From: Macrostomum lignano
Taxonomy: Eukaryota
Direction: 5' to 3'
DNA: 64,000 bases
Assembly: GCA_002269645.1 (NCBI GenBank)
Contig: NIVC01000151.1
Location: forward strand, 372,001 to 436,000
This document shows, in pieces, positions 1-63,065 of this stretch. Position 1 is the stretch's first letter. Each line of letters begins with the position of its first letter. Under the pieces are notes generated by a model that had not been told where the DNA came from, did no database searches, and saw nothing but the letters and a program-made list of their open reading frames with translations. The position numbers and the translations under genes were made by a program.

Positions 1-180
1 ACGTCCGTGCTTAATAGTTTTAGAGCACTATCGAGGGTGTCAGATCCAGGGTGTCAGATCCAGGGTGTCAGATCCAGGGTGTCAGATCTAGGGTGTGAAA
101 TCTAGGGCGTGAAATCCACGGTGTCAGATCCAGGGTGTCAGATCCAGGATGTCGGGTCCAGGGCCCGTCAGGTTACTCAC

Positions 181-3100
181 AGCCAGCATGGTGGCGGTGG
201 AGCCGCCGGCCAGCACTCCGTAAGGCACTTTCGACTGCGCCATCAGCTCCTGCAGGCTGCCGAACTTGGCGGAAGCCGTCGGGCGGCCAGCCATCAGGCG
301 GGTCGCCAGGCCAGCCGTGTAGCAGCAGGCGGTGGCCAGGGCAAACAGCCACCAGGCGAAGGCCAAGGCGCGGGCCGAGGGGGCCTTCGGGGTGCGCGCG
401 AAGCCTGAGGGTTTCAGGAATTCGCAGAACACGGATTAAACATCACAGATTAAACATCACAGATTAAACATCACAGATTAAACATCACAGATTAAACATC
501 ACAGATTAAACATCACAGATTAAACATCACAGATTAAACATCACAGATTAAACATCACAGATTAAACATCACAGATTAAACATCACAGATTAAACATCAC
601 AGATTAAACATCACAGATTAAACATCACAGATTAAACATCACAGATTAAACATCACAGATTAAACATTACAGATTAAACATCACAAATTTAGCATCACAG
701 GTTAAAAATCCACGACTGCATCCTCACCCTGGATGAAGAGGCCGCCAGTGATGAACGCGAAGGCTCCGCAGCCGGCTTTCCTCGCTTTGGCGACGGTCGA
801 GGAGGCGCTGCCGGCGCTGCCGCCCAGTTCGTAGGGGGACAGCAGGAAGAGGACGAAGGCCAGGCCGAGGTAGATGATGTAAACCAGCAGTAGCAGCACC
901 CAGGTCTATTGGGAGAGTAAAACAATATGATTTTGCACAATTTTGAATGTTGAAACTTAGAGAGCAAGCAAACCAGGCCTTAATGGACCCAATCACCTGG
1001 AAGGAATTCGAAAGAGAACTTGTGGTGCCGGAGCGCTGAGCTCTAGGCACTGACTAACTAACTATCTTATGCTATGTACGTACGTGCACACCATTCTTTC
1101 CTCTCCCTTCACTCTGACTGGCCATACCCCTAAGCTTCCATGTACTTGTACGTAGTTGATTGTCATCACGTGACTCTATTTTGGTGTTCTATCAGCCACT
1201 GCTCGAGTCATTATTATATAGGCTACTTGCTAGTTCAAATAAACCTTGAGTTTCTTTATGCCAACTACACGGCACGACAGAACTGAACAAAATGAAAAAC
1301 GGCGCACCAGGAGAAGACGAATTAAGACTGATCTACATCAAGACAGCGTGTGAAACAGTAAGAAAAGAATGTTCATTGAAATAACCAGACTGTGGACGGA
1401 ATCGGCGACGAAATGGGGAGAAGGACAAAAGCTAGGACTCATCATCCCGTTACACAAAAAAGGAGACAAAAAATACCTAAACAATTATCGGGGTGCCTGC
1501 CTACTACCGATGACAAGTAGGATCTTGGCAAGAATTATCGCAACCCGAATCAACAGGTGGGCGGAAGAGACCAACTGCCTGGACGAGAATCAAGCGGGTT
1601 TCAGGCGGGACAGGTCGACGATGGACGCCACTCAGACATCCTCAGACTACAGGAAGACGCGAAACTGATCAAAAGATCAGCGGAAATGCAGAGAATGGGA
1701 ACGAAGATGAAGTTAGCGGAGACAGCGATACCGTGGTTAAATTTCTGGATCTAAAAAAAGCATATCCGAGAGTAAACAAGCCAGCACTCTGGCGACTACT
1801 CGCACACCACGAGATGCCAGACAAAATGATCGAGAAACTAAAGGGCCTACATGAGCACACCGCATACAAAGTACACACGGAGAATGGGGATAGTCACATA
1901 TTTTTCCCACACCGGATTACATGAAGGATGCGCGAACTCACCCGTACTTTTTAACATCTACCATCAGGCGGTCATGAGAGCGGCAGAAACAGAAAGAAAG
2001 ACCACAGCAGCAAACAGAGGCGAAGAAGTTGGGATTGAATGGACCTATCTGCCAGGAAAAGACTGACCACCACAGAGAAACTATAAGTTCACGGAAGAAT
2101 CAACCAACCACGCGGATCACCTGCTCCCTGTTCGCGGATGATACCGCGGTGATTGGCGGAAAGAAAGAAATCGAAGAAGGAACGACGACGGTGAAGACAG
2201 TCTTGGGATGGCTAGAAGAAAGAACGAACGACGCGAAAGAAGAGACAGCAACAGTTAGGAACAGCAGAGAGCAATAGAATCCGAATGCTGAGGGTGTGGC
2301 TCGGAGACAAAGAAGACATCCACCAGAGACTTCAGAGAGCAGCAAGCGCCTGGGCAAAAGTTAAGAAGCGACTCAGAAGAACCAGACTAACGAACGCACT
2401 CAAGCGAGAGTGATCGAAGCATGCATCGAAAGCACGCTCACGTTCAACGCAGGAGCTAAACCCTTCAAAAAAGCGATATCAATCAACTCCAAAGAATTAT
2501 GGATAGTATTACATATTTGGAGCAGCAAAACTAAAGAACCTCTGCGGGAGATGGAAGAAAGACAGGTTAATATGTGGGACGTGAGACGAGAAATCGGGAT
2601 AAAAAGCATTCAAAGAAAAATCGAAACGGCACACTGGAGGAGACTAGGTCACGTACTGAGATTTCCAGACTCCAGCTTAACGAAAATCTGTGTCATGGGA
2701 TGGAACAAGAGATTAGAATCAATGAAAAGACCAAAGAAAAGGATGACTACGCTAATTACGTACTGGAGAAAACTCATTAGAAAGGCCAAACTCGAACCAC
2801 TCAGAGACGGACAGCTCGCGAACAAAAGAGAAGTGGAGGGAAATCACCAAAGATCGGGACGCCGAGTGGGATACGATTGAACGAGAGAGAAGTAAAACCA
2901 AGGGAAGAGCCGAAGAAGAACCAGAAAACCAAAGAGAACTACCAATGGAGGAAAACGAACTCATTGGCTTCAGGTGCTGGGAGGACGGATGCGAGAAAAC
3001 ATGCAGATCAAGAGGAGGACTAGCCATCCACAGGAACGTATGCACAGACAAGAGACCGGAATAAGAATGGACTGCAAGAGGTGTGATAGATTTTTTAAGA

Positions 3101-5717
3101 CGTAAGCGACGAGAAAAAACCATGAGAAATGGTGCACAGGAGGCAGAGTAGAGGGAACCAGGAGAGAATGCAACAGCTGCAAGAGATGGATAAGCAAATC
3201 AAATTATGCAAGACTCAGAAAGGGATGCGAGGCGAACGACCAGATAAGCGAGAGACCAACGACGAATGAGGAAGCGACGAGGATGGTAGCGAGAATGTAC
3301 AAAAGCAAGAGGAAAGAGGGAAGATATTGCAAGAGGTGGCTGGCAACGACGAATATGGCGAGACATGGGAGAATTTGCGGCGAGTAAGTCTATGGGGAGA
3401 GTTAAAAAAGATGATTTTGCACAATGTTGAATGCCTGTGAGGAGACCTTCGGGACCTTTGGAAACTTCCAGACAGCAGGACCTTTGGGTGGCACCTGTCT
3501 GCTGATTGAGGCCCCAGTCACAGCTAGCTAGGGCCGAGTGATTCGGTCAGTGTCCAGGGAACCGCAGAACTCACCGAGGCGTCGAACGGCTGCAGCAGCA
3601 GGGCGGCCTGCGAGGTCTGCGAGGCCGCCTCCTTGTACAGCAGCGACAGGCCCGAGGAGGAGATCGGCAGCGTGAAGTCCACGGCTTCCAGCCGTTTGGG
3701 CATGATGCGCAGAGTGGCCAGGGTCAGGTCTGCCGTCTGCGGGACAGGTGGCTGGCTTCTGTGACCCATTGACTCATACAGACTGGCACCCAGTGACTCA
3801 CTGACTGTCACCGAGTGGCTCACACAGACTGTCACCCAGTGACTCACACAGACTGTAACCCAGTGACTCATACAGAATGTCACCCAGTGACTCATACGGA
3901 CTGTCACCGAGTGGCTCACACAGGCTGTAACCCAGTGATTCATACAGACTGCAACCCAGTGACTCATACAGACTGTCACCCAGTGACTCATACAGAATGT
4001 CACCGAGTGACTCACACAGACTGTCACCGAGTGACTCATACGGACTGTCACCGAGTGGCTCACACAGACTGTAACCCAGTGACTCATACAGACTGTAACC
4101 CAGTGACTCATAGAGACTGTAACCCAGTGACTCATACAGAATGTCACCGAATGACTCACACAGACTGTCACCGAGTGACTCACACAGACTGGCACCCAGT
4201 GACTCACACTGACTGTCACCCATTGACTCACACAGACTGTTACCCAGTGACTCACACAGACTGTCACCCAGTGACTCGCACGCCAGACTTGAGCAGAATT
4301 TTCCTCTAAACTCAAAGTCGATCAACTTGATAAATTACTCCAACCGAACGACGCCGCAGTCCCAGACTCGCATCGTTCGCATCTTCTCTCCCTTCCATCA
4401 CCCACCTTGTTCACGATGTCACCCATCAGGCCGTTCCAGACCCCCTTCGGCGAGCGGGATCCGAACTTGCTGTCGGCTACCTCGTAGATTCGGTAGCGAA
4501 ATTTCAGCTCCCGCTGCAGGAGGTTCAGCAGGTCGATGTAGAAGCCCTCGTATCTGACCGGGTCCGAGTCTTCCACCCGCATCACGAAGGGCTTTTGCTG
4601 CACGTAGGGTTTATCGGATGGGGCGTGGCTAGCGCTTAGGTTTAGTATACAGGGTTTGAATTAAGATTTTAGGGTTCACAGTTGAGGACTGGACCAGGGT
4701 TCAATACAAAGGGCTCAAGGCTCAGGTCAGGGTTCAGGGTTTAGAGTTCAGGATACAGGGTTCGGGGTTCAGGGTTCCCGGGCTCAGGGTCTAGGGTCCA
4801 GGGTTCAGGGCTCAGACTTCAGGATTCAGGGTTCAGGGTTCAGAGTTCAGGGTTCAGGGTTGGGTCCAGGGTCCAGGGTTCAGGGTACAGAGTACAGGGT
4901 TCAGGGTTCAGCTTTGGTTTGAAACCTTGAAACCTTTAAAAACCTTTACTCTTCAAACCAAGGGTCCAGGGTTCAGGGTTCAGGGTTCAGGGTCTAGGGT
5001 ACAGGGTTCGGGTTCAGGTTACAGGGTTTAGGGTTCAGGGTTCAAGGTACAGGGTTCAGGGTTCAGCTTTGGTTTGAAACCTTCAAACCTTTGAAAACCT
5101 TTACTCTTCAAACCAAGGGTCCAGGGTTCAGGTTCAGGGTCTAGGGTACAGGGTTCGGGGTTCAAGGTACAGGGTTCAGGGTTCAGAGTTCAGGGTTCAG
5201 GGTCCAGGGTCCAGGGTCTAGGGTCCAGGGTTCAGGGTTCAGAGTTTGGAGTTCAAGGTCCAGGGTTCAGTGTTCAGACTTCAGGGTTCAGGGTCCAGGC
5301 TTCATATTTCAGGATCCAGGGTCCAGGGTCCAGGGTCTAGGGTCTAGGGTCTAGGTTCTAGGGTCTAGGGTTCAGACTTCAGGATTCAAGGTTTCAGAGT
5401 TCAGGGTATAGGGTTCAGAGTTCAGGGTTAAGGATTTAGGGTACATACAGGGTACAGGGTTCAGGGTTCAGTATTTATAGTTTATGGACCTATGGGAATA
5501 AACGCCCTGACACTATAATTCTGAGATGTTCTGGACTCTGGGATTTGGCAACCGTTAACCCAGACTCAATACGCAATCCAGCATTGAGGGTCTCCCAGCT
5601 CACCGTGATGGTGACAACGCGGAGCTCTCGGTTCTCAAGGTCGGCCGCTCCGGCCTGGGATGCGGCCAGGTGGCAGCAGCAGGCGAGCAGCAGCAGCGTC
5701 AGCAGTCGGCAGCTCAT
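181..5717 (-). CDS. Divergent ionotropic glutamate receptor-like subunit lacking the amino-terminal domain; 5 exons in window, 3' part beyond the left edge
   Basis: Exons (minus): 5717-5604 (MSCRLLTLLLLACCCHLAASQAGAADLENRELRVVTIT, signal peptide), 4597-4406 (QKPFVM..EGFYIDLL..WNGLMGDIVNK, S1), 3736-3575 (TADLTLATLRIMPKRLEAVDFTLP), 905-728 (M1 TWVLLLLVYIIYLGLAFVLFLLSPYE, M2 FITGGLFIQG), 404-181 (M3 WWLFALATACCYTAGLATRL, start of S2 YGVLAGGST). All junctions are GT-AG and phase-compatible. Confidence 0.9.
432..690. repeat. 14-bp tandem repeat (GATTAAACATCACA)n in iGluR intron; another 14-bp array (CAGGGTGTCAGATC) lies at ~35-150
   Basis: Direct reading; near-perfect units. Confidence 0.95.
950..3387 (+). 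mobile_element. 5'-truncated, frameshifted non-LTR retrotransposon (RTE-like clade), antisense within an iGluR intron
   Basis: RT motifs spread over several frames: KMKNGAPGED, NYRGACLL, ENQAGFRRDRST, FLDLKKAYPRV, GCANSPVLFNIY, LFADDT, plus RTE-type RLGHVLR and a C-terminal Cys/His segment. Flanked by a 46-bp direct repeat (904-949 vs 3388-3433, 41/46 identical). Confidence 0.88.
1021..1279. mobile_element. Solo LTR (259 bp) inserted into the LINE
   Basis: Ends TGTGGTGCCG...CGGCACGACA (9/10 inverted match, TG..CA) with a 5-bp TSD GAACT at 1016-1020 and 1280-1284. Internal TATA-like and AATAAA motifs. The LINE reading frame (EFERELNKMKNG) rejoins when it is removed. Confidence 0.88.
3765..4275. 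repeat. 24-bp minisatellite (GACTCACACAGACTGTCACCCAGT-like), intronic
   Basis: Direct reading; explains repeat ORFs 3524-4325. Confidence 0.95.
4690..5470. repeat. Degenerate 7-bp (TTCAGGG/TCCAGGG/TCTAGGG) telomere-like satellite, intronic
   Basis: Direct reading. Confidence 0.9.
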
Positions 5718-5817
5718 GACGTCTCGGTGCAGGGCGGTGGCGAGTCAGTGAGCTCAGAGTCGGTGAGCACAGAGTCAGTGAGCTCAGAGTCAGTGAGCCC
5801 CAGCTCAGCGCAGCCAG

Positions 5818-5824
5818 TTTTATA
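5818..5824 (-). promoter_or_regulatory. Candidate TATA box of the ATD-less iGluR
   Basis: TATAAAA on the minus strand ~100 bp upstream of the ATG at 5717, in GC-rich context. Confidence 0.5.
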
Positions 5825-6062
5825 GGCCTGGCCGGTGGCGCCGGACTGGAGATCGGGGGGGGGAGATCTGGGAATTTTTCCTATTGACTGGGGCTGAGAC
5901 GCGGATTATTATCCCATTGGGATAAATTATGGATGCACCTGTCACCAGGCAGAGATACTGGCTGATAGGGGAGCGCGCTGGGTCAAGGAGATCTGGGAGC
6001 AGAGTCTGGAGTAGGGCTCTCCTTAAAAGCTCATCCTCAGACTCGAGAGGGCCGGGTTTCAT

Positions 6063-6870
6063 GTCACGGAGTCTCTGCGTCACGGAGTCTCTGCGTCACG
6101 GAGTCTCTGCGTCACGGAGTCTCTGCGTCACGGAGTCTCTGCGTCACGGAGTCTCTGCGTCACGGAGTCTCTGCGTCACGGAGTCTCTGCGTCACGGAGT
6201 CTCTGCGTCACGGAGTCTCTGCGTCACGGAGTCTCTGCGTCACGGAGTCTCTGCGTCACGGAGTCTCTGCGTCACGGAGTCTCTGCGTCACGGAGTCTCT
6301 GCGTCACGGAGTCTCTGCGTCACGGAGTCTCTGCGTCACGGAGTCTCTGCGTCACGGAGTCTCTGCGTCACGGAGTCTCTGCGTCACGGAGTCTCTGCGT
6401 CACGGAGTCTCTGCGTCACGGAGTCTCTGCGTCACGGAGTCTCTGCGTCACGGAGTCTCTGCGTCACGGAGTCTCTGCGTCACGGAGTCTCTGCGTCACG
6501 GAGTCTCTGCGTCACGGAGTCTCTGCGTCACGGAGTCTCTGCGTCACGGAGTCTCTGCGTCACGGAGTCTCTGCGTCACGGAGTCTCTGCGTCACGGAGT
6601 CTCTGCGTCACGGAGTCTCTGCGTCACGGAGTCTCTGCGTCACGGAGTCTCTGCGTCACGGAGTCTCTGCGTCACGGAGTCTCTGCGTCACGGAGTCTCT
6701 GCGTCACGGAGTCTCTGCGTCACGGAGTCTCTGCGTCACGGAGTCTCTGCGTCACGGAGTCTCTGCGTCACGGAGTCTCTGCGTCACGGAGTCTCTGCGT
6801 CACGGAGTCTCTGCGTCACGGAGTCTCTGCGTCACGGAGTCTCTGCGTCACGGAGTCTCTGCGTCACGGA
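6063..6870. repeat. Perfect 16-bp array (GTCACGGAGTCTCTGC) x50
   Basis: Direct reading; no variant units seen. Confidence 0.97.
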
Positions 6871-7179
6871 ATGGAATAGAATGTACGACAGGATGCAATA
6901 TTTATTACATTTGGCATGAATTGTTAAATGTCGTTTTCAATTGTAAGAAAAAGTCAATAATCTTAATGTTTTTAATTTTGATAGTAAAAATTTGGACCAA
7001 CGAATTTCAGGGTGAGCACACGCTCCGCCCCGCAGCGGATTTCTCATTTTAGAGGGCGCCTGAAAATGCGGGTACTGGGGAGGAGCTTCCAGTCCAGATG
7101 CTAGGTCAGGTCTCCCTGGCTCAGGGGAAGCCCTGGGATCGCAGGTAGCCAGTTCCTCTTAGATACCCAAGCAGCCTCT

Positions 7180-7375
7180 TGACTCACCCTGAGCTCACGG
7201 GGAGGATGGATGGGATATTGACTCACCCTGAGCTCACGGGGAGGATGGATGGGATATTGACTCACCCTGAGCTCACGGGGAGGATGGATGGGATATTGAC
7301 TCACCCTGAGCTCACGGGGAGGATGGATGGGATATTGACTCACCCTGAGCTCACGGGGAGGATGGATGGGATATG
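7180..7375. repeat. 39-bp tandem repeat x~5
   Basis: TGACTCACCCTGAGCTCACGGGGAGGATGGATGGGATAT units. Confidence 0.9.
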
Positions 7376-8059
7376 GGATATCAAGCGGCTGGGAAGGAAT
7401 GTTTTCTCAACTGCGGGCTGGCACAAGGAGAACTAATCCGCCTCGACTCCTCTGAGCAGTTTAAAAACTCCGATTCAGCCGCCGATGAGCGGAGCCTGTG
7501 CTGCGGCCGCCGAAGGGTTTTTCAGGAGGGGGGTTGCAGCGCCACATGACCCCCTTATTTTCACCTAGGAACAGCTGACCAGCTGACCCATTTTGACCTT
7601 CCCTGGATGGCTCGTCCACTGCAGTTTAAGCGACGATCGCAACGGCAGGAGGCAGCTGCCCCCTCTGCCACTGCCCTAATTAGTGACAATGAGATTCCGC
7701 AGGAGTTTCCCAACCCCAGACTGCAGGCTCAGAGCTCCTTGGACAGAAGTCATTAGCCGCTCCCCAATGTTTATAGCCCACCGGGCGCCTGAGCAAATGC
7801 AATTTGCGTTAATTGCTAGCGGGCGCCCCGACCCCCGCATGAGCTGCGGAGTGCCTCTCCGGCTGACAGCAACCGGTGACGGAATTTTCCACGGCTCTGA
7901 TGGGGGGAGACAAATGAGTCTCAGAGAACCGCGAGCTGCCCTTTGTTTGAATACTCTGATGGCAGTCGGCAGGGACTGGGAATGCGGGCCGCTTCTGGGC
8001 CACGGATGGATTGACCAGGACCCGTTCCCATCACTTATTGCGATCACCGATTCCACATC

Positions 8060-8493
8060 ACGGATTCCCCATCACCGATTCCCCATCATCCATTCCCATC
8101 ACCCATTCCCCATCACCCATTCCCCATCACCCATTCCCCATCACCCATTCCCCATCACCCATTCCCCATCACCCATCACCCATTCCCATCACCCATTCCC
8201 CATCACCCATCACCCATTCCCCATCACCCATCACCCATTCCCCATCACCCATTCCCCATCACCCATCACCCATTCCCATCACCCATTCCCCATCACCCAT
8301 CACCCATTCCCCATCACCCATTCCCCATCACCCATCACCCATTCCCCATCACCCATTCCCCATCACCCATTCCCCATCACCCATTCCCCATCACCCATCA
8401 CCCATTCCCATCACCCATTCCCCATCACCGATTCCCCATCATCCATTCCCCATCACCGATTCCCCATCACCCATTCCCCATCACCCATCACCC
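8060..8493. repeat. C-rich (CATCACCCATTCCC)-like low-complexity array, with a second patch at ~8855-8932
   Basis: Direct reading; explains the PITH/HHP ORFs. Confidence 0.9.
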
Positions 8494-9269
8494 ATTTTTT
8501 TTAGATGCAGGGGGGTTGTGTGCACCCTGGCGCACTTTAAGCGACATAGACACACAACCGGCGAGAGGCATTACTGCCAATTCCGCCGACTCCCCTGAGC
8601 AGGCACACAAGCGCGCGGATACGTACGCAGGCACACACTCACACAGGAGTGTACAGCGGCACTTTATTTTATCGTTAGGCATGTACACTTCACTGCGCCT
8701 TGGGGGGTTGGCTCTCAAGGCCGTTAACTGCACGAGCAGAGCCAAGCCGAGATTCCAATTCAGCCCCAAATTAATGTGACTGCACTTGGAATCGAGCCTG
8801 GGTCGCTGGCACACCAGAGCAGCTGCGCTACCGCTGGGCTACGGCCCCCCCTACCCATCACCCATTCCCATCACCCATTCCCCATCACCCATCACCCATT
8901 CCCATCACCCATTCCCCATCACCCATTCCCATCAAATCCTTGATTGGTTATTAAAGAGTAGACAACATCTGACGCGCTTCTCAGCCAGAAATCTGAACAG
9001 ACGCAGCAGTGGCGGGTCCGGATTTCTCATAGCTACAGATTTATCTGCGCAGTCAAAGCAGTGGTTAATTATTCAATAGCTGGGGAGACAATGTGCGAGA
9101 TTGTTTTAAACAAATCTTTGCGACGCATTTCAAGCAGAGTCCCAGTGAATTCCATGGTCACGCGCTGAGAGCCGAAGAGTTCCGAAAGTTCATGAGTCCT
9201 AGCGAGCCAAAAGTCAGTTGCTAGGAGTCAAAGACTGTCCAAATCAGGCGGGACTGGCCGTTGAGTCGC

Positions 9270-17582
<8,313 letters not shown>

Positions 17583-19140: not shown

Positions 19141-20327
19141 AGTGTCACGGGTTCACTGTGAGTATCACGAGTTGACTGGAGTGTCACGGGTTCACCGAAG
19201 GATCAATGATAACGAGTTACATAAAAGGGCTGAGCTATGCACTGAGAACTTCATGGCCATCTCGAGCACCCATTAGCCATGAATACGTAACGAGTTGCAG
19301 CAGCAAATAAGCTCATCATCCTATACAGGACACGGGCTGCAGGAGCTCTTCTGTCAGCAAACACCACTATATCGTGTTGACACAGGAACTGCTGCAGGTG
19401 GCTGCTCGTTCAGAACTCACTGCCGTGCGGGCTAGAGAAGTGAACTTTAATGCCTGGCGCTGACTGCCCGGGAGTCCTGTCCCTAACGCTCGTATTGAAA
19501 CAACTTTCGGCCTTGAATATAATACATGTACATGCGATTCAATCAAGAAATGATTATGTTCAAGGTAGCTCATATTCAAGAATTCATGTGTCAGCAACTG
19601 CCTTTCAGAGTTCCCTTTTCTTCCCTTTTCTTCTATTTACACAGACAATTATATATAATTGCCCAGCAGGATATCAAAGCTGCAATCAAGCCTTACTGTG
19701 TAGCCAAAGATAACCATTGGTCTAGCTAACTCAGTGACTACGAGTATGGCCTATCCTTGTGAAACTTTCTGGTCTTTCTGGTAACAACCCACCCCGACCT
19801 TTCACCCAATTATTAAAGCCATTCGCGTATCTCGGTATGTTCATGACCAATCTTTTGTGGTATTTCTCCCTTAATTATTACGTGATAAACGATAAATCTC
19901 TGGGTCCGATGGGGTATAAAGGCGACGAAACGAGGTTTTCATGCCGGGGTTGCTGTTGCACAGTGCATACATATGTATGCAAGCGGCCGCCTCGCCCCGA
20001 ATGAAACTGGGACACTGAAATTCTGGCTAATTCAAACACATTCAGTGGCTCCGCGATTGCTCCAAAAAGTTTGCGAAGACAAATTCAATGCGCCTCGGAG
20101 GACCGGCCCGCAGTGCGCTTCTGCCAGCAAACATCGGCCTGGCGCTGACTGCCCAGGAGTCCTGTCCCTAATGCATCGGTCAACATTGCGACCAGCATAT
20201 ACCAGAAGCATTGAGCCTAGAATGTGTTGCCATGGCAACGCAAATACAACTTTCCTGCTACATTTAGGCCACATCTAGCTACATCAGGCAGCTGCTTTTT
20301 GCGAGAAACTCAGCCTGAGCTCAAGCA

Positions 20328-22178
20328 ATGTCAACTGCTGCAATGGACGAGACCCCCAGCACCGGAGCGCTGCTGACGCAGGTCCTGGCCGCGGCTGCCA
20401 GCGAGACCACAGCCCACGGGCTCAGCAGGCTGGCGGGCCAGAGGCCGCTCTACATCAAGCTCTGCTGGCTGCTGGCCTTCCTGGCCCTGCTCGCTGTGTT
20501 CACCTTCAGCATGCACGGCTTCACAAGCAAGCTCGTCAGAGGCGAGGTCAGCACTTCCTACGAGGCCGAGGCTGTGGACTTCCAGTTTCCCGACGTGTAC
20601 TTCTGCAACAATGTCCAGGTTTCGGGCACCTACTCCGTCACGCTCGCCAGCGAGGTCGTCACCGACATCAACGCCAGGATGACCGCCTCGCTCGCCACCT
20701 TCGACTCGGCGCTGCAGCGGCTGCTCAACTCGTCGCTAGCGAACGCCACCGAGTCTCAGATCGGGCAGATGAAGCTGTACAGACTGAAGTCCGCCATCCA
20801 GTCAATGCCGTACAGCTTGCTGGTGGACCATCTCGCTCACAAGGAGCAGCAGACGGTACTGAAGAACGACAGCAAGTCGGGCGTCTCCCTCAGACCCTTC
20901 TACCACCCGAATCACCTCAAGTGTCTCAAGGTTGAGCTGACCGAGCAGAGACTCGCTGAGCTGAGCAAGGTCAACTCGGAGATCAGCTTCCAGTTCATTC
21001 TGGATCCACACTTTACCGACTTTGATGACACATTGAATGTCAGCGCGTATTCGCAGATAATGCGCGTAACCGTCCCGCTGTACAACAAAATACAAATACT
21101 CGTGTACGACTGGGACCTGGACTCGCCCTACGAGATCGACAGGCCGATGGGAATGAGGCTGTACCTGGCTCCTCGAGGCGAGTACCCGAGCAGGTTCGTG
21201 ACCAACTTCCTGCTCGCTCCCGGCAGGTCCTACAGCATCGGGCTCAGCATGCAGAGCATCAAGAAGGAGCCCGAGGCGTACGGCGGACGCTGCCTGACGG
21301 AGACTCCCGACGTGCAGTTCGTCAATCCGTACGACGGCTCGGCGTACGCGTTCGGCTACAGCAACAGCTTCTGCTACTTCTCAGAGTTTGCTCGGCAGCT
21401 GTCTGTGAACGGTGGCTGCAGTCCGTACGTGAACCCGCTGCCGTGGCAGTTCAGGCACCTGCGCTTCTGCCTGAATGCGAGCGGCCTGAACGAGTCTCAG
21501 ATCGAGTCGAACCTCCTGCAGGCGTTCACAGCTGACACGGCCGCGCTGAGCGACTTCCAGCAGCTGTGCCAGAGCAGGCAGCTGTGCGTGTCACGGAAGT
21601 ACGAGACCAGCACCTCCAGCGCGAACTGGCCCAACGAGAACGGGCAGATCCGGCTTGTTTTGAACATCATGAAGACTATTCTGGACAAATCTCCAAGCAT
21701 ATATCGGCCTGCCTGGAGAGCGTTAATTCACTCCGTGAGGCAGCACTTTTCTGCGGAAGATGGGGAGGAGGACATTTCTGATGCATAATTTATGACCAAC
21801 AAGTTCTTCTCCCGCTCGGGCCTGAAGGTGACGCTGCGCAGCCAGCAGTCGCGCAGCTCGCAGATCCGGCTGTCGCCCGGCTACTCTCTGCAGACGTTCA
21901 TCGCCGACATTGGCGGTACTGCGGGCATCTACCTTGGCTGCAGCCTGCTGAGCCTGTGCGAGCTCGTCGAGCTGCTGTACAACCTGATCGCCAAGACCCG
22001 GGGGCAGCGAAGCTCCACCAACATCGTCCGCGTGAGGCCCGCGCCACCGACGGCCAGCAGCTCGGGCACGCCGGACTGCAGCGAGGTGGAGCTGGGCGAC
22101 AAGAAGCTCAGCTCAGGAATCTCAGGAGTAGAAAATTGTTGTTCAATTAAAGCTTGTGATGGTGTGATGCTTGCTTAA
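20328..22178 (+). CDS. DEG/ENaC (amiloride-sensitive sodium channel family) subunit, interrupted by an in-frame TAA at 21786-21788
   Basis: Pre-TM1 TTAHG motif, TM1 LCWLLAFLALLAVFTFSM, FPDVYFCN, GMRLYL, Cys-rich thumb and NWP. After the stop, in the same frame: YSLQTFIADIGGTAGIYLGCSLLSLCELVELLY (TM2 with GxS filter). Confidence 0.88.
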
Positions 22179-44714: not shown

Positions 44715-47636
44715 GAACCAAACAGACGGAGACAGACAGAGAGACAGACAGACGGACAGACAGACAAGCCTCACCTGAAAGTCTATACCCATTACGATGG
44801 GCCGGAGGCTGGAAGCCACATCAAAGTCCGTAGAGTAGAAGCACATGCGGTCGGCGCGGCAGTCTTTGTCGCCGGCGGCCACATCGCGCGAGCCGTGTCG
44901 GTCTTTATGCAGCTGAAGGTTAACCAGGCTGACCCGGCTGGGGTAGCGGAAGTTGAACACCGGCGTGAGGGTCTTGCGCTTCTGAAGCTCGACCAGCACC
45001 TTGTCGTCGGTGATGGGGTGCACCTACAGGCAGCGGGATGGGAGTTCGAACTCGACTGAGGGCAGAGTTTTGGCGACATCAACCTACAGGCCGAGGTGAG
45101 GCTAGCAGGCGGAGTGCACAGCAGCCAGCGTTCTTTGGGCTCTCGAACATGGTGGGTGTCAGCACTGGGGGAGCCACTGCAGGAACCAATCCAGGGCCCA
45201 CACCAGGAATCACTTCATGGGTCTTTGCGTGGAACACAATACATGTAGAAACTACTCTAGTGACCACAACAGGGTCACTCCAGTAGTCATAACAAGGGTT
45301 ACTCCAGTGGCCACAAGGGTCACTCCAGTGTCCACAAGGGTCACTCCAGTACGTGGTCACAGCACAGCAGGGTCACTCCAGTAGTTACAACAAGGGTTAC
45401 TCCAGTGGCCACAAGGGTCGCTCCAGTGGCCAAAACAGGGTCACTCCAGTGGCCACAGCAGGGATCACTCCAGTCACCACAGCAGGGATCACTCCAGTCA
45501 CCACAGCAGGGATCTAGGGCCCACTCCAGAAGAGGACGGTGCGATACCGGTCTAGCTGGTTGAAACCGGCTACCTTGAACCTGACAAGACCAGTTGGAAC
45601 CAGCAGCTCACCTTGAACGTCAGCCTGTTAGTATCGCGTTCGAAGGTAATTTCGGACACGCCCTTCTGGTTGATGATGTTCAGGTCCTTCAGATAGACAT
45701 CGTCAATCTTAAACATGGCCATCACCTCCACGCCGATGGCTTTGAGCTTAGCGGTGACCTCGGGCTTGAGAGCCACGGAGAACTCGGCCCCGGACGCGGT
45801 GGAGCAGCGCTGCTCCGAGCAGTTCCTGGCCCTGCTCAGGTCAAAGCTGGCAGGAGTTGGCCGATGTAGGAAGAACACGCTGCTGCCGGACTCCACGACG
45901 TATTTCGGCATGCCGATCTTCTCAGCGTCCGCTTTGCCGACGGTGGCCCGGCAGATAACGCGGTGGGTGAAGTCCCTGCCGGTCGAGGAGTCACCGGGCG
46001 GCACCCTGCTCACCGTGATGTTGATGGTCCGCCTGTCCGTCAGGGAGGTCAGCGTGTCCACCGACACCGTCCGCGAGCCAAACAGCGAGTTGAACTCGCT
46101 CATCCGCAGCTCCTTCCAGTCCGCGCTTTCGCGAACGGCCGGCGAATAGAACACGGGCTCGGCGGTCACTTGAGCGACGTTGTTGAAATAAGTGGAGCAG
46201 TTGTAGGACATGGACTCGCCCTCCATGGCGTAGATGACGGCTGGCAGGCTGCCGGACACTTCGCTGGGGCCATCGGACGGCTTGTAGCTGAATTGCGGCA
46301 TGCTGACTACGTCCGCGTTAAATGTGAACTTCTTGTTGCCCGCCTCGCACATGTACTGGCCGGCGTGACGGTTCTGCGCCGTCGGCGGGAACTCGATGAT
46401 GTTGCCTGTCTTGGAAACCCGGATGCCGTCAACCTCGGTCCAGTCCTTGGTGCTCATGGGGGTCAGAGCCTTCCTCCTGTGGTCCTTGCTGGTGTGCGTG
46501 AACTTGTAGACAGTGAGCGGGTCCGAGCAGATGATGGGGCACACCAGCGGCGTGTGGTCCATGCCGGAGAATATGGAGATCGGCTCCTCATTCACGTTGT
46601 CGGGCAGAGAGCAGTCAGGCGCGTTGACTCCCTGCTTGGTGTACATCACCTTGTCTCTGGGGATCTTCTGCTCAACGGAGAAGGTCCGGTCGTATGGTTG
46701 GCCCTGGCCGGAAAAAGACAGCGTGGCGCAGATGCCGACCTGCGTCGGCGAGCGCCCCTCGAAGGAATTGAAAATGCTGGCGCTGAGGCCGTAGGCGGCG
46801 TAGTGCAGCCTGCCGGTGGCCAGGTTCAGGTGGATGTGCTTGAGCAGGTTCTGCGCCTTGTCGTCAAGCTTTGAATGATAATTCACGAACAGGGCCGCCC
46901 GGGACACCTGGTAGTTCTCGCAGGACCCGGCATCGAAGTTGAGCACGGCTCCCATGTTGATCTTGGCCCTGAGAAACGGCGGGGCATTTCTTAGCGCGTT
47001 GACCACGGAGGGGTCGAGAAATTCCTTAAAGCCGAAGTTGGACTCCATCTTCAGGTTCTTGAGAAACGACACGGCATCCGGCGTCAGAAAGCGAGTAGAG
47101 ATGGACGAGCCGCTGGACGTCTTGCTTCTGTATTTGCCCAGGGGTTCCAGACTCCACACGAACAGGCTGTTGGACACCAGCTTCACCTCCGGCTGTCCGG
47201 CCACAAGCACTTCCACCAACAGCTCCAGCTTGCTGTTGAACACGTCGTAGGAGCCCAGCGGCGTATCCAGCAGCTTGAACTCGTAGGAGCCCTCCTTGGC
47301 ATCGATGATGCGCACCGAGAACGGGATCTGCGTGCTCTCGCACCGCTCCTGGTGGCGGGTCACCGATGACAGGTCGATGGTGTTGAAGGTGGCGCTATTG
47401 GCGCACTTGTACTTGAGAACGGCCGAGTGGCCGATGTCCGCCCTGCCCTCCAGGGCGATCTTGATCTTCAGGCTCTTGTCGGGCATTAGGAAGGCCATCA
47501 TGTTCGGGCTGCCGACCTCCCAGACTTCGTCCCAAGAAAGGAGAATCTTGCCAGTCTGGGAGAAGTTAAAGCGCACCTTGTCCTCTGCAGCCGCGGCTGC
47601 CAGGCACAGCACCAGGACACAGCCGAGAGACAACAT
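40576..47636 (-). CDS. Type I membrane Ig-superfamily protein (~895 aa) with an L1CAM/neuroglian-type cytoplasmic tail (FIGGY)
   Basis: Exons (minus): 47636-45612 (signal peptide [17 protein letters not shown]; Ig-like segments with [10 protein letters not shown] and SYNC..VICRAT), 45023-44775, 44464-44137 ([25 protein letters not shown]; [20 protein letters not shown]), 40661-40576 ([15 protein letters not shown]). Phases are compatible. Confidence 0.88.
40685..41155. repeat. 30-bp intronic array (TCTGCGGAGCTGGCAGTGGGGAACCGGGGA)n
   Basis: Direct reading. Confidence 0.93.
42125..42795. repeat. 34-bp intronic array (GACCGAAATACTTGTGAGCAGGATTCTTTCACAA)n
   Basis: Direct reading. Confidence 0.95.
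43692..44142. repeat. 31-bp array built from the exon/intron 5' splice junction (TGATGTCG|GTGAGTGATTG), ~14 copies
   Basis: Direct reading; the last unit overlaps the real donor at 44136-44135. Confidence 0.93.
44505..44766. repeat. (GACA)n/(GA)n microsatellite, intronic; a 21-bp array lies at ~45260-45515 in the next intron
   Basis: Direct reading. Confidence 0.93.
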
Positions 47637-49066
47637 CCTGCTGAGGAAATAGTTTCAATGAGGCCTATTTTAGACACAAATGAATGCAAAAAGCAAGGCA
47701 AAAATAAAACTTGTGTTTATTTTATATTGGGGCCTAGGTCTAGGGTAAGATTTTATTAAATGTTTTTTGAATTTAAAATATTTAATAAATCTTAATGGCT
47801 TAAGTATAAAGACCCCTTACTTTTCAAAGTTTTTCAAGTAATAAAAAGGTTTAAATTTTTTTGTATTTGGAATCTGTAACATTTTTCATAATGCATTTTG
47901 CCTAATTAAGTATGATGATCATTTTGGCTAGAAATTCCTTTTACATTATAAATATGTTCTTTTTGTACTTAACAAATCTCTATGCACATGTATTTTATGC
48001 TTTATTCTATATTATCTATACATAATGAATAAATATTTTATAACCAAAATAGCGGCCTAAACATTTGCAACAACATCTTTAGAGAGTTAGCCTAGGCTAA
48101 AAATGTATAAAGTAGGGAATTTAGAGAGATTTTAAAAGTTAACATTGTAGACATATGCTGGAATGAAAATACTAGTTTTTTCAAGTCTATATTCATTAAT
48201 AAAATTGATATAAATTAAATTTTGTTATATCAAGCAATCAAGCATAAAGTTGTTTACAATACATGGCATATTCAAACTTTTTAGAGAATATATATTTTTA
48301 GAAATAAGAGTTTTACTAAAATTTTTGTGTCTTTTTTGATAGAATTTTTTTTTGTTTTACCTTTGTTTCTTTGAAAATTCTATATGCTAAGTATATGCCA
48401 AGTTTTTTCAACAAGGGCAAAAATATGTCAGAATTTTCTAGTAAAAAGGCCACCCTCTAGATTATGGTCATGACCCTTTAATCCCAGTATCTACTAGGAC
48501 TAAAAAATCCTCAATAGGAGCAAATGTATAGATTGAATTTAGTATTGGATTAGAGAATATATAAAAACAGTAGTATAGTGCAAGAAGACCACTTAGGCCC
48601 AGAATACATAATACACTATTGACTATATAATCTAATATACTATAAATGGTCTGTTGGTATCTAGGTAGGTAGGTAGGTATATGATCAATTTTAGCAAATA
48701 TGGTTCAACTGATTTTCTTTGAACTTGTACTGTTCAATCAAAAATATGCTACTAATTTTGCATGACTTGCTACTAATACATAGTATAGTATATTGAGATA
48801 TATTAGCTGGTTTTTTGTGCGAATGGGTGCGAATAGCATCCTGGTCTTAAAAATTGCACCCTGAAATTTGACTCAGGGTACAAAAAGCGCACCCAAATTT
48901 TTGCAAGGATGTGATGTGGGTTTTACAATTTAGTGTTTTACTGTTATGGGCATCTTAAGTCCATAACTTCATATTCTTAGAATTAGCCGGTAATTTTTTA
49001 ATCTTTAAGTTTAATTAATGTAAAGCAATTGTCAACTATCAATTAGATTTTGGTATTGGTAAGCAC

Positions 49067-58980: not shown

Positions 58981-60437
58981 TTGGTTTTGACAATCAATAT
59001 GAAAAATGGACAATCAAAATGGAGGAATCTAGCACGCTGACGAGTGCGTCAATGGCTGAAACACGAGTGCGCGTAGCGCACGAGGGTTTTGCCATAGACG
59101 CACAAGTCAAAGTGCTTGATTCCCATTCTTATTTGATCCAACATGTGTGGCTAAAGTAGACAAGGGTGGAGCGGGGGGTGTGGAGTTAGACTTGAACCAT
59201 AGACAAAATATGCGCGAGCTAGTCTGAACATTCTTGCACGATGGAAAGAAGATTATGCTTGTATAGTCTATGGCTGTTATGCTAAATATAGAAACATTGC
59301 GCATTACATTCTTGCACGATTGACATTCCTGCACGGAGTGCACATGTAAATTCAAGGTGCTTTTACCATAGACACTTGCATTTCTGCACGCATATGGCGA
59401 CTTCCAAAGCATTCTTGCACGCTGGATCAAATAAGAATGATATATTCCTGCACGGTCACGAGTGCACGATGTCCTTCACGCACGAGTGAACGTGAAGGAA
59501 TTCCATTGTCGGATGATTCATCGTGCAGGAATGCACAAAACCGTGCAGGAATACATTTCTGCGCCTAATGCTTTTTCAGTGAGATTTTACCATAGACATC
59601 CATTCCTGCACGCAAAAGAGTGCAAGAATGCCATTCTTGCATGGAAAATCAGCCGACAATGAAAACAGCCGTAGATCTGCATGCAGCAGCTCAGCTCAGC
59701 TTCGCAGCAGCTGCGGCTTAGGCCATAGACTTTTTGACGATCGAAATGAGAATTGGACAATCAAAATGGCAACGGGAGCAGTGTGCGCGTTTATTTGAAT
59801 GAAATTTTAACAATAGAAACGAGAAATTGACAGCAGAAATGGCAACACAGTCAGAAAAATGATGGAAACACAGCAGTCCAGCAGCATAGGTTCAGAACTC
59901 CTGCCCAGTTTGTCCGGGAAATTGTTGTTGACCCGCTGTGCCATCTCGCTCAGGGTGAGGAACGGGTTGCGGTTCACCTCTGCTTCCAGAAATTTACGAA
60001 TCTCCTCATCCACCTTGCACCTTGCTTCTTTTCGGCCTCCACGAGGCATACCGTTCATCCTTCCCTCATTCCTGTACAGCCTCACGATGCGATGAGCAGT
60101 TGAACTTGACAGCTGAAGGATTATTGCTGCGTCCTTGACCGGTGTGCCTCGATCTATTGCCTCGATGAGCCGACGTCTGTCATCTGGACTCACAGGTGGT
60201 GCCATCACCAGCAAACTGGAGAGATGGCTGAGAAAGATGGCTGGCTAATGCTTTAATGTGCTGCCTCGCTAAACTAACTGCGCGTTGCCATTTTGATTGT
60301 CCAATTCTCATTTCGATCGTCAAAAAGTCTATGGCCTAAGCCGCAGCTGCTGCGAAGCTGAGCTGAGCTGCTGCATGCAGATCTACGGCTGTTTTCATTT
60401 TGATTGTCCATTTTCTCATATTGATTGTCAAAACCAA
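58981..60437 (-). mobile_element. Tc1/IS630-like internally deleted transposon retaining only the N-terminal HTH ORF (ATG 60205); left TIR split by a ~640-bp insertion
   Basis: TA-flanked ends TTGGTTTTGACAATC; perfect 116-bp inverted repeat at 59659-59774 / 60283-60398; ORF RRRLIEAIDRG..AAIILQLSSSTAHRIVRLY..RGGRK..NPFLTLSEM is paired-like HTH plus linker; no DDE domain. Confidence 0.82.
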
Positions 60438-62632: not shown

Positions 62633-63065
62633 GGTGGCCAATTCGCTCGCTCGGTGGGTGCAAAGCGAAGGAAAGAGCGAAGATTGCTGCTTCTCTGAGC
62701 AAAATGGAGGGCGCGCTGATAAGCTTCTGCTCAGCAGGGACAATTCGATGAAAGCAAATAGACCCTGAGGCTTGGGCCATAGACTGACTGTTGTCTCCCG
62801 TGCAGCACCGAGATGGGCCAGAGATTTCCAGCTTATTGTACTTATTGTTACTACATAATTAGAAGATACAGCATACTGGCTTATGCTTTTAAATCTTCAG
62901 AACCGATCTCGTACATGTAAACTGGTGAGATCGCCTGTAGAAATTGACTCTAGTTAGCGTTTCCCTGAAATTTCCGAAAATTGACAACTTGCTGATTACA
63001 TGTAAATATCATAGGGAATTGACGCATGAAATGCAGTACGAGCGTAGAAATCGGGCCAAACTGAG

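What the first reader, a model, noticed from the sequence alone, without database searches (positions are those of the whole stretch)
181..5717. An ATD-less iGluR with a rewritten pore and gate, lying directly downstream of a canonical iGluR
Seen: exon 1 joins the signal peptide straight to the S1 start (LENRELRVVTIT), so the whole amino-terminal domain is absent. All five visible intron positions and phases match the neighbouring full-length receptor (RVVTIT|QKPF vs RVTTVE|DAPF; VNK|TADL vs IDK|KADL; DAS|TW vs SPT|VW; IQG|F vs QQG|S; GSTATMLA| vs GSTYQFFK|). The SYTANLAAF gate reads CYTAGLATR, the Q/R position is Ile (FIQG), and the PLT ligand motif reads TLR, while the carboxylate-binding Arg and GST are kept. 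Known: iGluRs normally need the ATD for assembly, and protostome chemosensory tuning IRs lack it and rely on ATD-bearing co-receptors. Inference: this could be an independently derived IR-like chemosensory or modulatory subunit with a non-glutamate amino-acid ligand, possibly partnering the adjacent receptor.
Basis: partly seen in the sequence, partly recalled or inferred. Interest (0 to 1): 0.78.

Follow-up and report, generated by a model that had tools for sequence, protein, structure and literature searches.

The report
Short glutamate-receptor subunit lacking its amino-terminal domain
This is a real, transcribed flatworm (Macrostomum lignano) gene for a glutamate-receptor-like channel subunit that has no amino-terminal domain and has an altered pore and gate; similar short subunits turn out to be scattered across many animal phyla, so it is a divergent new member of a known kind rather than a new kind of receptor.

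Summary
Window 5717-181 (minus strand) holds the first five of eight coding exons of an intact Macrostomum lignano gene. Its 493-aa product is GenBank 'hypothetical protein BOX15_Mlig007793g1', a model built from RNA-seq transcripts. The protein runs signal peptide, S1, M1-M2-M3, S2, M4, with no amino-terminal domain (ATD).

No ATD-like coding lies between this gene and the upstream canonical kainate-type receptor (gene B, 988 aa). A TATA box and an in-frame stop precede the ATG. The closest homologue (43% identity) comes from an intronless transcript contig with the same architecture.

The gate reads CYTAGLATR, which includes the Lurcher A8T change. The Q/R site is Ile. The PLT motif reads TLR, and the Arg/Ser-Thr/Glu amino-acid-binding triad is kept.

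- The host is itself a protostome.
- The seven shared intron positions are family-wide, not specific to the neighbour.
- ATD-less relatives with a hydrophobic Q/R site and a degenerate gate occur in molluscs, nemerteans, hemichordates and a frog ('U1-like').
- The position of the A+homologue pair (97-100% bootstrap) within the non-NMDA receptors is unresolved.

The most likely function is a specialised amino-acid-binding subunit, probably heteromeric. That is inference, not a shown result.

The parts
5604..5717 (-). Gene A coding exon 1: ATG, signal peptide (MSCRLLTLLLLACCCHLAASQA...), then the ATD-LBD linker and S1 start (LENRELRVVTIT). Phase-0 GT donor.
   Evidence: identical to the P0001 N-terminus
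5818..5824 (-). TATAAAA, 107 nt upstream of the ATG. Candidate promoter element of gene A's own.
   Evidence: sequence; consensus match only, function not shown
5745..5747 (-). In-frame TGA nine codons upstream of the ATG. It closes the reading frame towards the 5' end.
4406..4597 (-). Exon 2: S1 (QKPFVMRVEDSD...GDIVNK). Includes F83 at the GluA2 Y450 lid position.
3575..3736 (-). Exon 3: S1 ligand motif A-T110-L-R112-I-M-P-K-R117 (canonical A-P-L-T-I-T-x-x-R) up to pre-M1. The R112 codon is 3709-3707 and the R117 codon is 3694-3692.
   Evidence: Arg at the T480 position occurs only in A and P0004 among 138 relatives
728..905 (-). Exon 4: M1 and the M2 pore loop (…AFAFITGGLFIQ/G). The Q/R-site Ile214 codon is 734-732. 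Phase-1 donor.
181..404 (-). Exon 5: pore-loop exit FARTPK, M3 with gate C243-YTAGLA-T250-R251 (codons 324-298), the M3-S2 linker and the start of S2 (GGS284-T285-ATMLA). Exons 6-8 lie 19-928 nt beyond window position 1.
906..3574 (-). Intron 3 of gene A. It holds a decayed non-LTR retrotransposon, antisense to the gene, with a reverse-transcriptase fragment at about 1436-1640 on the + strand.
   Evidence: RVT_1, E 9e-7, 29.2 bits, just under Pfam's 29.6-bit cut-off; many stop codons
5718..9269 (-). Interval between gene B's stop codon and gene A's ATG. It has no ATD-like coding, about 1.46 kb of minisatellites (6063-6870, 7179-7374, 8043-8495), and AATAAA at 8668-8663 as a candidate poly(A) signal for gene B.
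9270..17582 (-). Gene B: a canonical kainate-type iGluR of 16 exons and 988 aa, with ATD, MQQG and SYTANLAAF. Exons: 17582-17444, 16868-16710, 15587-15327, 14779-14607, 14526-14473, 14388-14194, 13777-13622, 13547-13431, 13215-13102, 12988-12773, 12656-12495, 11916-11736, 11553-11336 (GC donor), 10645-10420, 10163-9892, 9593-9270.
   Evidence: the model gives exactly the annotated 988 aa; mostly 50-56% identity to vertebrate GluK1/2/3/5 and flatworm kainate receptors; ATD similarity only in 13428-15594

Best explanation
Shown:
- Window 5717-181 is the 5' part of an intact, transcribed M. lignano gene (BOX15_Mlig007793g1, 8 coding exons, 493 aa).
- It encodes a short subunit of the non-NMDA (AMPA/kainate/delta/phi, 'AKDF') branch of ionotropic glutamate receptors: a signal peptide joined directly to S1, then M1, pore loop, M3, S2, M4 and a short tail. 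There is no amino-terminal domain.
- Together with one 43%-identical homologue it forms a fast-evolving lineage.
- That lineage resembles other short AKDF-like subunits found in spiralians, hemichordates and amphibians ('U1-like'). Most of these share a non-Gln, usually hydrophobic, Q/R site and a degenerate SYTANLAAF gate.

Inferred:
- The clamshell still binds an alpha-amino acid. The carboxylate-binding Arg117, Ser284-Thr285, the amino-group-binding Glu332 and the LBD disulfide are all kept.
- Side-chain selectivity is changed by Arg112 in place of the near-universal Thr, Phe83 in place of the lid Tyr, and Ile358 in place of Tyr732.
- The transmembrane part is still under selection, but it no longer behaves like a standard glutamate-gated cation pore. 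The relevant changes are Ile at the Q/R site, loss of the +4 acidic residue, the pore-helix Trp changed to Ala, Thr at the Lurcher position and Arg at the gate mouth.
- The most likely role is a specialised or modulatory subunit that co-assembles with canonical pore-forming kainate-type subunits. This would be analogous to tuning IRs with their co-receptors, or to GluK4/5 with GluK1-3.
- It probably arose by loss of all ATD exons at the ancient phase-0 intron that sits exactly at the ATD/LBD boundary.
For: Gene reality and architecture:
- Exon model with GT-AG introns.
- 100% match to the annotated 493-aa protein.
- Full gene intact to the stop codon in L001.
- The GenBank annotation of this assembly is built from RNA-seq transcripts plus TransDecoder (PMC5730564).
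- No ANF_receptor domain.
- No ATD-like coding in 5718-9269.
- TATA box and in-frame stop upstream of the ATG.
- The homologue P0004 sits on an intronless 1625-nt contig whose ORF starts with a signal peptide preceded by an in-frame stop.

Family placement:
- Best solved-structure sequence hits are GluK5 (4.7e-62), GluK3 and GluK2, then GluA1/2.
- The AF2 model has pLDDT 83, and Foldseek matches GluA, GluK2 and GluD2 LBD-TMD at about 5e-30.
- Over 198 conserved columns A is 32-36.5% identical to kainate types, 28.9% to IR25a, 24.9% to IR8a and 19-24% to tuning IRs.

Constraint:
- A keeps 37 of 42 columns that are at least 90% conserved.
- Between A and P0004 the membrane regions are the best conserved: pre-M1/M1 60%, M2 46%, M3 47%, against S1 42% and S2 36%.
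- A and P0004 share derived states: L-R-I, (I/V)QGFARTPK, Cys at gate position 1, and a -KPLV C-terminus.

Wider group:
- 26 of the 138 aligned relatives have fewer than 80 residues before S1. Twenty of them lack Gln at the Q/R site, and 17 match 5 or fewer of the 9 gate residues.
- By contrast 73 of 94 ATD-bearing relatives have Gln there, and 83 of 94 match 8-9 of 9 gate residues.
- Source organisms of the short relatives are given.
- The boundary intron is conserved in Tubulanus, Ptychodera and Gigantopelta short genes.
Against: - No functional, localisation or co-expression data were available, so ligand, conductance and partners are all inference.
- The pore changes could equally mean a non-conducting protein.
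- Transcript support for gene A is indirect. It rests on how the annotation pipeline works; I did not see reads.
- The grouping with other short subunits has weak NJ support (14-34%) and may be long-branch attraction, so common ancestry and convergence cannot be told apart.
- Raw similarity is highest to slow-evolving canonical kainate receptors, as expected for any long branch.
Confidence: 0.6

Rival explanations
1. It is a bona fide member of the protostome IR family: a chemosensory 'tuning' receptor descended from the IR25a-like ancestor that needs an ATD-bearing IR25a/IR8a-type co-receptor.
For: The host is a protostome. There is no Pfam ATD. The gate is degenerate, as in tuning IRs (IR21a CYTGSIIAF, IR31a YYTSSVVGG), while co-receptors keep it. 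IR25a/IR8a also lack Gln at the Q/R-equivalent position (TPQGGG). NJ attaches A+P0004 weakly to IR21a/IR31a (14-20% bootstrap).
Against: [quoted passage not shown] Typical IRs have an N-terminal region of about 200 aa before S1, whereas A has about 6 mature residues. A is more similar to kainate-type receptors than to IR25a/IR8a. The NJ attachment is a classic long-branch pattern. Equivalent short receptors occur in deuterostomes such as hemichordates and a frog. There is no expanded repertoire.
Confidence: 0.15
2. It is a kainate-binding-protein-like molecule: a membrane-anchored ligand-binding protein that does not conduct ions, acting as a sink, scaffold or trans-synaptic organiser.
For: It has the same short architecture as the frog 'glutamate receptor U1-like' protein (P0032). 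Vertebrate KBPs are known, from my own knowledge, not to give currents alone. The pore-helix Trp is changed to Ala, the Q/R site is hydrophobic, the +4 acidic residue is lost, Arg sits at gate position 9, and T625M/M629P-equivalent changes are present. AF2 confidence is lowest in the pore loop (60-69).
Against: The transmembrane segments are the best-conserved part between A and P0004. The pore-lining T3 and A7 of the gate, the QG of the filter, WW in M3, SPYE after M1 and EF in M4 are all retained.
Confidence: 0.2
3. It is an annotation or reading artefact. The true product would carry an ATD supplied by upstream exons (for example gene B's exons 1-9 spliced to gene A's exon 2), with exon 1 being a minor or spurious start.
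For: Both junctions are phase 0 at homologous positions, so a B-ATD/A-LBD chimera would be in frame. M. lignano makes polycistronic precursors (PMC5730564, PMC8629364).
Against: Exon 1 encodes a well-formed signal peptide with a TATA box and an in-frame stop upstream. The transcript-derived annotation starts there. The homologue's transcript has its own signal peptide and upstream stop. Many other species encode the same short architecture. The repeat-adjusted distance between the two coding sequences is about 2.1 kb, above the 1-kb operon criterion.
Confidence: 0.03
4. It is a decaying partial duplicate (pseudogene in the making) of a kainate receptor.
For: It is very divergent (about 31% identity to everything except P0004), and canonical pore and gate motifs are lost.
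Against: The ORF is intact across 8 exons with consensus splice sites. It keeps 88% of the most conserved columns and the LBD disulfide. Derived states are shared with a homologue only 43% identical, which implies long-term purifying selection. The gene model is transcript-based.
Confidence: 0.03

Closest known systems
Vertebrate kainate-binding proteins / Xenopus 'unitary' short subunit XenU1 (represented here by Ascaphus truei 'glutamate receptor U1-like', P0032)
   Same: Both are about 480-490 aa with a signal peptide joined directly to S1 and no ATD. Both are of non-NMDA type with M1-M4 present. P0032 also has a hydrophobic Q/R site (Leu) and a degenerate gate (AYIASFAAF).
   Different: Identity is only about 30% and common descent is not supported. 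P0032 keeps the canonical Thr of A-T-L-T-I-T, where gene A has Arg112. Binding and conductance properties of gene A are unknown.
Protostome ionotropic receptors (IRs; Benton 2009, Croset 2010)
   Same: Both are iGluR-derived, lack a Pfam ATD and have divergent M3 gates. The concept of a derived ligand-specific subunit working with a canonical ATD-bearing co-receptor applies to both, and the host here is a protostome.
   Different: Gene A keeps all three glutamate-contact residues, which IRs typically lose. It has no ~200-aa N-terminal region. It is closer to kainate receptors than to IR25a/IR8a. It is a single gene rather than an expanded family. Clade membership is unresolved.
Kainate receptors GluK1-5, including the neighbouring gene B
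   Same: These are the best sequence hits, and structural hits cover AMPA, kainate and delta LBD-TMD. All seven introns of A coincide in position and phase with the last seven of gene B.
   Different: Gene A has no ATD. Its Q/R site is Ile, the +4 Asp/Glu is lost, and the gate is CYTAGLATR. Arg replaces Thr in the S1 motif. Identity is only about 31-36%.
Lurcher mutants (GluD2 A654T, equivalent to A8T in SYTANLAAF; also GluA1 A636T)
   Same: Gene A natively carries Thr at position 8 of the gate motif (T250). That is the Lurcher substitution as defined in PMC3434102.
   Different: In gene A it is a wild-type state embedded in other gate changes (S1C, N5G, F9R). Whether it destabilises the closed state here is untested.
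Short AKDF-like receptors annotated as 'kainate 2-like' or 'glutamate receptor 1/2/4-like' in Lineus, Tubulanus, Haliotis, Gigantopelta, Sepia, Ptychodera and Glandiceps
   Same: They share the signal-peptide-to-S1 architecture, the boundary intron, a hydrophobic Q/R site followed by QG[YF], degenerate gates, and often a tandem arrangement. The signature QGF.R.P[KR] is shared with the Sepia-type group.
   Different: Identity is 25-30%. The grouping has only 14-34% bootstrap support. Tubulanus and Ptychodera have a separate signal-peptide exon plus a mini-exon, whereas gene A has both in one exon.

Membership tests
Ionotropic glutamate receptor superfamily | Pfam Lig_chan-Glu_bd (S1) plus Lig_chan (M1-M3, S2, M4) | tested here: met
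   PF10613 at 5e-30 and PF00060 at 9e-16. The AF2 model matches LBD-TMD of GluA/GluK/GluD.
Non-NMDA (AKDF) subfamily | Greatest similarity to AMPA/kainate/delta rather than NMDA receptors; shared non-NMDA intron positions | tested here: met
   The top 60 PDB hits are all GluK/GluA. Gene A shares 7 of 7 introns with a kainate-type gene. NMDAR1 identity is 26% against 32-36.5% for kainate types.
Canonical kainate receptor (GluK) | ATD (PF01094) present | tested here: not met
   No ANF_receptor hit. No ATD exons upstream.
Canonical kainate receptor (GluK) | Conserved MQQG filter and SYTANLAAF gate | tested here: not met
   Gene A reads FIQG and CYTAGLATR, matching 5 of 9 gate residues.
Protostome IR family | Found in a protostome | tested here: met
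   The protein is from Macrostomum lignano.
Protostome IR family | No recognisable ATD | tested here: met
   However, gene A also lacks the ~200-aa N-terminal region typical of IRs.
Protostome IR family | LBD lacks one or more of the glutamate-contacting Arg / Thr / Asp-Glu residues | tested here: not met
   R117, T285 and E332 are all present.
Protostome IR family | Phylogenetic nesting in the clade rooted by IR25a/IR8a | tested here: inconclusive
   NJ on 198 columns with six Drosophila references: the A+P0004 pair has 97% support, but any deeper grouping has 20% or less. No lophotrochozoan IR sequences could be obtained.
Protostome IR family | Expression in chemosensory neurons | not testable with these tools
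   No expression atlas was accessible. A literature search for the gene identifier returned nothing.
Kainate-binding-protein / short-subunit type | A protein of about 45-55 kDa that begins at S1 after a signal peptide and has M1-M4 | tested here: met
Kainate-binding-protein / short-subunit type | Common descent with vertebrate KBP/U1 | tested here: inconclusive
   A split grouping A with P0032 and the other short receptors has 20-34% bootstrap support.
Kainate-binding-protein / short-subunit type | High-affinity kainate/glutamate binding without channel activity when expressed alone | not testable with these tools
   This needs a binding assay and electrophysiology.

The most novel reading that the evidence does not exclude
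Gene A and its homologue would be the macrostomid branch of an ancient, bilaterian-wide family of short AKDF subunits in which loss of the ATD went together with a re-engineered permeation pathway. That pathway has a hydrophobic Q/R site, no +4 acidic residue, a native Lurcher-type Thr and an Arg ring at the gate mouth. On this reading the protein is not a glutamate-gated cation channel. It would be a tonically open, ligand-closed or differently selective channel, or a dominant modifier of the neighbouring kainate receptor. The lineage-specific second pocket Arg (R112) would tune it to a non-glutamate acidic ligand.
Probability: 0.12. Interest if true: 0.7.

Novelty: new member of a known kind. 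Interest (0 to 1): 0.35.

Why it matters
- It gives a clean, transcript-supported example of how an iGluR can lose its whole ATD at a conserved phase-0 domain-boundary intron and stay under selection.
- The comparison suggests that short, pore-divergent AKDF subunits are much more widespread than the two textbook cases (insect-type IRs and vertebrate kainate-binding proteins). Here they appear in flatworm, nemerteans, molluscs, hemichordates and a frog.
- An earlier survey (PMC6307864) attributed short non-vertebrate iGluR sequences, with large deletions especially in the ATD, mostly to poor genome sequence data.
- A natural Lurcher-position Thr and a Thr-to-Arg change in the ligand pocket are convenient handles for structure-function work.
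- The tandem pair of short subunit and canonical kainate receptor offers a simple co-expression test in a transgenic flatworm model.
- None of this overturns current understanding.

Tried and rejected
- The word-indexed protein search with the 290-aa fragment found only the gene itself and two partial paralogue predictions. The exhaustive search was needed to find relatives.
- The search with gene B did not return its own 988-aa record or locus tag. I therefore could not tell whether A ('g1') and B belong to one annotated transcriptional unit.
- Literature searches gave nothing usable for the gene identifier, for flatworm ATD-less iGluRs or for kainate-binding proteins. Statements about KBPs rest on my own knowledge plus the frog 'U1-like' hit.
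- The stored part of Croset's Dataset S1 held none of the five IR25a/IR8a names I searched for, and I did not look further for lophotrochozoan IRs. Only six cleaned Drosophila reference sequences could be used.
- NJ trees with bootstrap, on 198 and 434 columns, did not resolve the position of A+P0004. No ML software was available.
- dN/dS was not attempted. A and P0004 are saturated at 43% amino-acid identity, and no DNA for the near-identical paralogues (P0002, P0003) is held.
- An operon with gene B was considered. The repeat-adjusted distance is about 2.1 kb and gene A has its own TATA box, so an operon is unlikely but not excluded.
- I considered whether exon 1 is a converted copy of gene B's exon 9. 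Both are 114 nt, but only the last 12 codons are alignable, so I treat the equal length as probable coincidence.
Full report
**What is in the sequence.** On the minus strand of window 5717-181 there are five exons with consensus GT-AG introns: 5717-5604, 4597-4406, 3736-3575, 905-728 and 404-181. Joined together they give a 290-aa open frame.

- The frame begins with a hydrophobic signal peptide (MSCRLLTLLLLACCCHLAASQA…).
- Six residues later it enters the S1 start (LENRELRVVTIT|QKPFVMR).
- Pfam finds the iGluR ligand-binding and channel domains and nothing else.

**Identity of the gene.** The fragment is 100% identical to the first 290 residues of a 493-aa GenBank protein, 'hypothetical protein BOX15_Mlig007793g1 [Macrostomum lignano]'.

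- The genomic record (NIVC01000151.1, assembly Mlig_3_7) was fetched as L001.
- The gene has eight coding exons and seven introns with phases 0,0,0,1,0,1,0. It is intact to its stop codon.
- Exons 6-8 (rest of S2, M4, tail) lie 19-928 nt beyond window position 1.
- The full protein still has no ANF_receptor/ATD domain.
- The GenBank annotation of this assembly was derived from RNA-seq transcript assemblies (StringTie/TACO/TBONE, ORFs by TransDecoder; PMC5730564). The model, including its start, is therefore transcript-based, although I did not see reads myself.

**Is the ATD really absent?** Several lines of evidence agree.

- ATD segments of six full-length relatives hit the window significantly only inside the neighbouring gene (13428-15594, E down to 5e-16). 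Nothing in 5718-9269 scores better than E = 3.5.
- An in-frame TGA lies nine codons upstream of the ATG (5747-5745), and a TATAAAA lies 107 nt upstream (5824-5818).
- The closest homologue, P0004 (43% identity, E 2e-108), sits on an intronless 1625-nt contig from an RNA-seq run. Its ORF in fact begins further upstream than deposited, with a good signal peptide (MARSILTSPAMGLLLLLILLDSTALLVQA) preceded by an in-frame stop. The signal-peptide-to-S1 architecture is thus seen on what appears to be a spliced transcript, since no introns interrupt the ORF.

**The neighbour.** I modelled gene B completely: 16 exons, 17582-9270, minus strand. The model gives exactly the annotated 988 aa.

- It has an ATD, MQQG and SYTANLAAF.
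- Its LBD-TMD is mostly 50-56% identical to vertebrate GluK1/2/3/5 and to schistosome and tapeworm kainate receptors.
- Its last seven introns coincide in position and phase with all seven introns of gene A. The last of these, in the unalignable tail, is only approximately equivalent (15 versus 12 residues after the M4 'EF').
- One of them has a GC donor.

This intron pattern is not specific to the pair. The phase-0 intron at the ATD/LBD boundary (…TT(V/I)x|xxPF) and most of the others are also present in short receptors of Tubulanus, Ptychodera and Gigantopelta. Gene A is also no closer to B (33.5% over 198 conserved columns) than to other kainate-type receptors (32-36.5%). Tandem partial duplication of a kainate-type gene is a reasonable origin, but it is not demonstrated.

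**Family placement.**

- Sequence search of solved structures gives GluK5 (4.7e-62), GluK3 and GluK2, then GluA1/2.
- An AlphaFold model (pLDDT 83; LBD, M1, M3 and M4 above 90; pore loop 60-69) matches AMPA, kainate and delta LBD-TMD structures at about 5e-30.
- Against cleaned Drosophila sequences from Croset et al., A is 28.9% identical to IR25a, 24.9% to IR8a, 24% to IR21a and 19% to IR31a.
- In neighbour-joining trees A+P0004 is a firm pair (97-100% bootstrap). Its deeper attachment is unresolved: 14-20% with the long-branched tuning IRs, and 14-34% with other short receptors.

**Short relatives are widespread.** Of the 138 relatives aligned from the 150 best hits of an exhaustive search, 26 have fewer than 80 residues before S1. 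Many of these have clear signal peptides.

- The named ones come from a cuttlefish, two gastropods, two nemerteans, two hemichordates and a frog. The Lineus model is two short receptors fused, and the frog protein is 'glutamate receptor U1-like', the kainate-binding-protein type.
- Within these 26, the Q/R site is Leu, Val, Ile or Trp in 14 and Gln in only 5. Seventeen match 5 or fewer of the 9 gate residues.
- Among 94 ATD-bearing relatives, 73 have Gln at the Q/R site and 83 match 8-9 of the 9 gate residues.
- The 'rewritten pore and gate' is therefore typical of short AKDF-like subunits. It is not peculiar to this gene.
- The motif (I/V)QGFARTPK of A and P0004 resembles WQGFERTPR of the cuttlefish-type group.

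**What is special to this lineage.**

- Arg112 replaces the Thr of the A-P-L-T-I-T-x-x-R motif only in A and P0004 (2 of 138).
- The carboxylate-binding Arg117 is invariant (138 of 138). Ser284-Thr285, Glu332 and the LBD disulfide (C344, C400) are kept.
- The lid Tyr is Phe83, and Tyr732 is Ile358.
- In the gate C-Y-T-A-G-L-A-T-R, position 8 is Thr, which is the Lurcher A8T change (PMC3434102). Position 9 is Arg, unique among the 138.
- The +4 acidic residue after the Q/R site is Ala, and the pore-helix Trp is Ala.

The protein nevertheless keeps 37 of 42 columns that are at least 90% conserved. Between A and P0004 the membrane segments are more conserved (46-60%) than S1 or S2 (36-42%). This argues that the derived channel domain is functional rather than decaying.

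**How it probably works (inference).**

- An alpha-amino-acid-binding clamshell with altered side-chain selectivity is coupled to a non-standard pore.
- By analogy with tuning IRs plus co-receptors and with GluK4/5, the likeliest role is a specialised subunit in heteromers with canonical kainate-type subunits. The adjacent gene B is an obvious but untested candidate.
- A KBP-like non-conducting role is the main rival.
- Membership of the IR family fails one defining criterion, loss of ligand-contact residues, and is phylogenetically unresolved.
- The claim that iGluRs need the ATD is too strong. ATD-deleted GluA1 and GluD2 have solved structures, and ATD-less NMDA receptors still gate.

**Verdict.** It is a divergent new member of a known kind: a short, ATD-less non-NMDA iGluR subunit. 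Its independent origin, chemosensory role, ligand and partnership with the neighbour remain open.

Noticed in passing
window 20319-22175 (+): Two adjacent open frames (489 and 129 aa) match the Pfam ASC family (amiloride-sensitive sodium channel, DEG/ENaC) at 1.4e-24 and 3.1e-9. A second ligand-gated or mechanosensitive channel gene therefore lies about 3 kb upstream of gene B on the opposite strand.
   Followed up: partly
window 11334-11335 (minus strand), gene B intron 13: The donor after exon 13 (…GSTYQFFK) is GC, not GT (AAG|GCGAGG). No GT occurs before the next in-frame stop. With this donor the model gives exactly the annotated 988 aa.
   Followed up: yes
L002 1-200 (contig of SRR28338165): The deposited start of P0004 (MDYQGK…) is mis-called. 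The ORF extends 33 codons upstream to MARSILTSPAMGLLLLLILLDSTALLVQA…, a signal peptide preceded by an in-frame stop.
   Followed up: yes
P0005 (Lineus longissimus, 989 aa); L004 6001-11434 and 14338-17434 (Ptychodera flava): The Lineus 'protein' is two complete short receptors, each with its own signal peptide, fused in one model. The Ptychodera locus carries two adjacent short receptor genes. Short AKDF-like receptors therefore tend to sit in tandem arrays.
   Followed up: partly
138-sequence alignment of relatives: Absence of the ATD correlates strongly with a non-Gln, usually hydrophobic (L/V/I/W), Q/R site followed by QG[YF], and with a degenerate SYTANLAAF gate. The pattern holds across molluscs, nemerteans, hemichordates, a frog and this flatworm.
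   Followed up: partly
C-termini of P0001 and P0004: Both end in -(S/K)KPLV despite only 43% overall identity and otherwise unalignable Ala/Gly-rich tails. This may be a conserved trafficking or anchoring motif.
   Followed up: no
window 5604-5717 versus 13102-13215: The coding part of gene A exon 1 and gene B exon 9 (the last ATD/linker exon) are both exactly 114 nt and end at the same phase-0 boundary. Only the last 12 codons are alignable (6 identical). This is probably coincidence, but it is compatible with exon 1 being a remodelled copy of that exon.
   Followed up: partly
window 1-180, 430-710, 3759-4281, 4727-5471, 6063-6870, 8043-8495, 10673-11262, 14881-15206, 15612-16665, 16894-17402: Nearly every intron of both receptor genes, and the spacer between them, is filled with long, highly regular minisatellites (periods 7-48 nt, some 100% identical copies). 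These make up a large share of gene length.
   Followed up: partly
window about 1300-3450 (+), inside gene A intron 3: A decayed non-LTR retrotransposon lies antisense to the gene. A reverse-transcriptase fragment matches RVT_1 (E 9e-7, 29.2 bits, just under Pfam's 29.6-bit cut-off), and the frame is broken by many stops.
   Followed up: partly
window 45573-47654 (-), 61025-62896 (-), 59810-60244 (-): Two long uninterrupted ORFs (694 and 624 aa) have no Pfam match. A 145-aa ORF carries homeodomain-like HTH domains of the transposase type.
   Followed up: no
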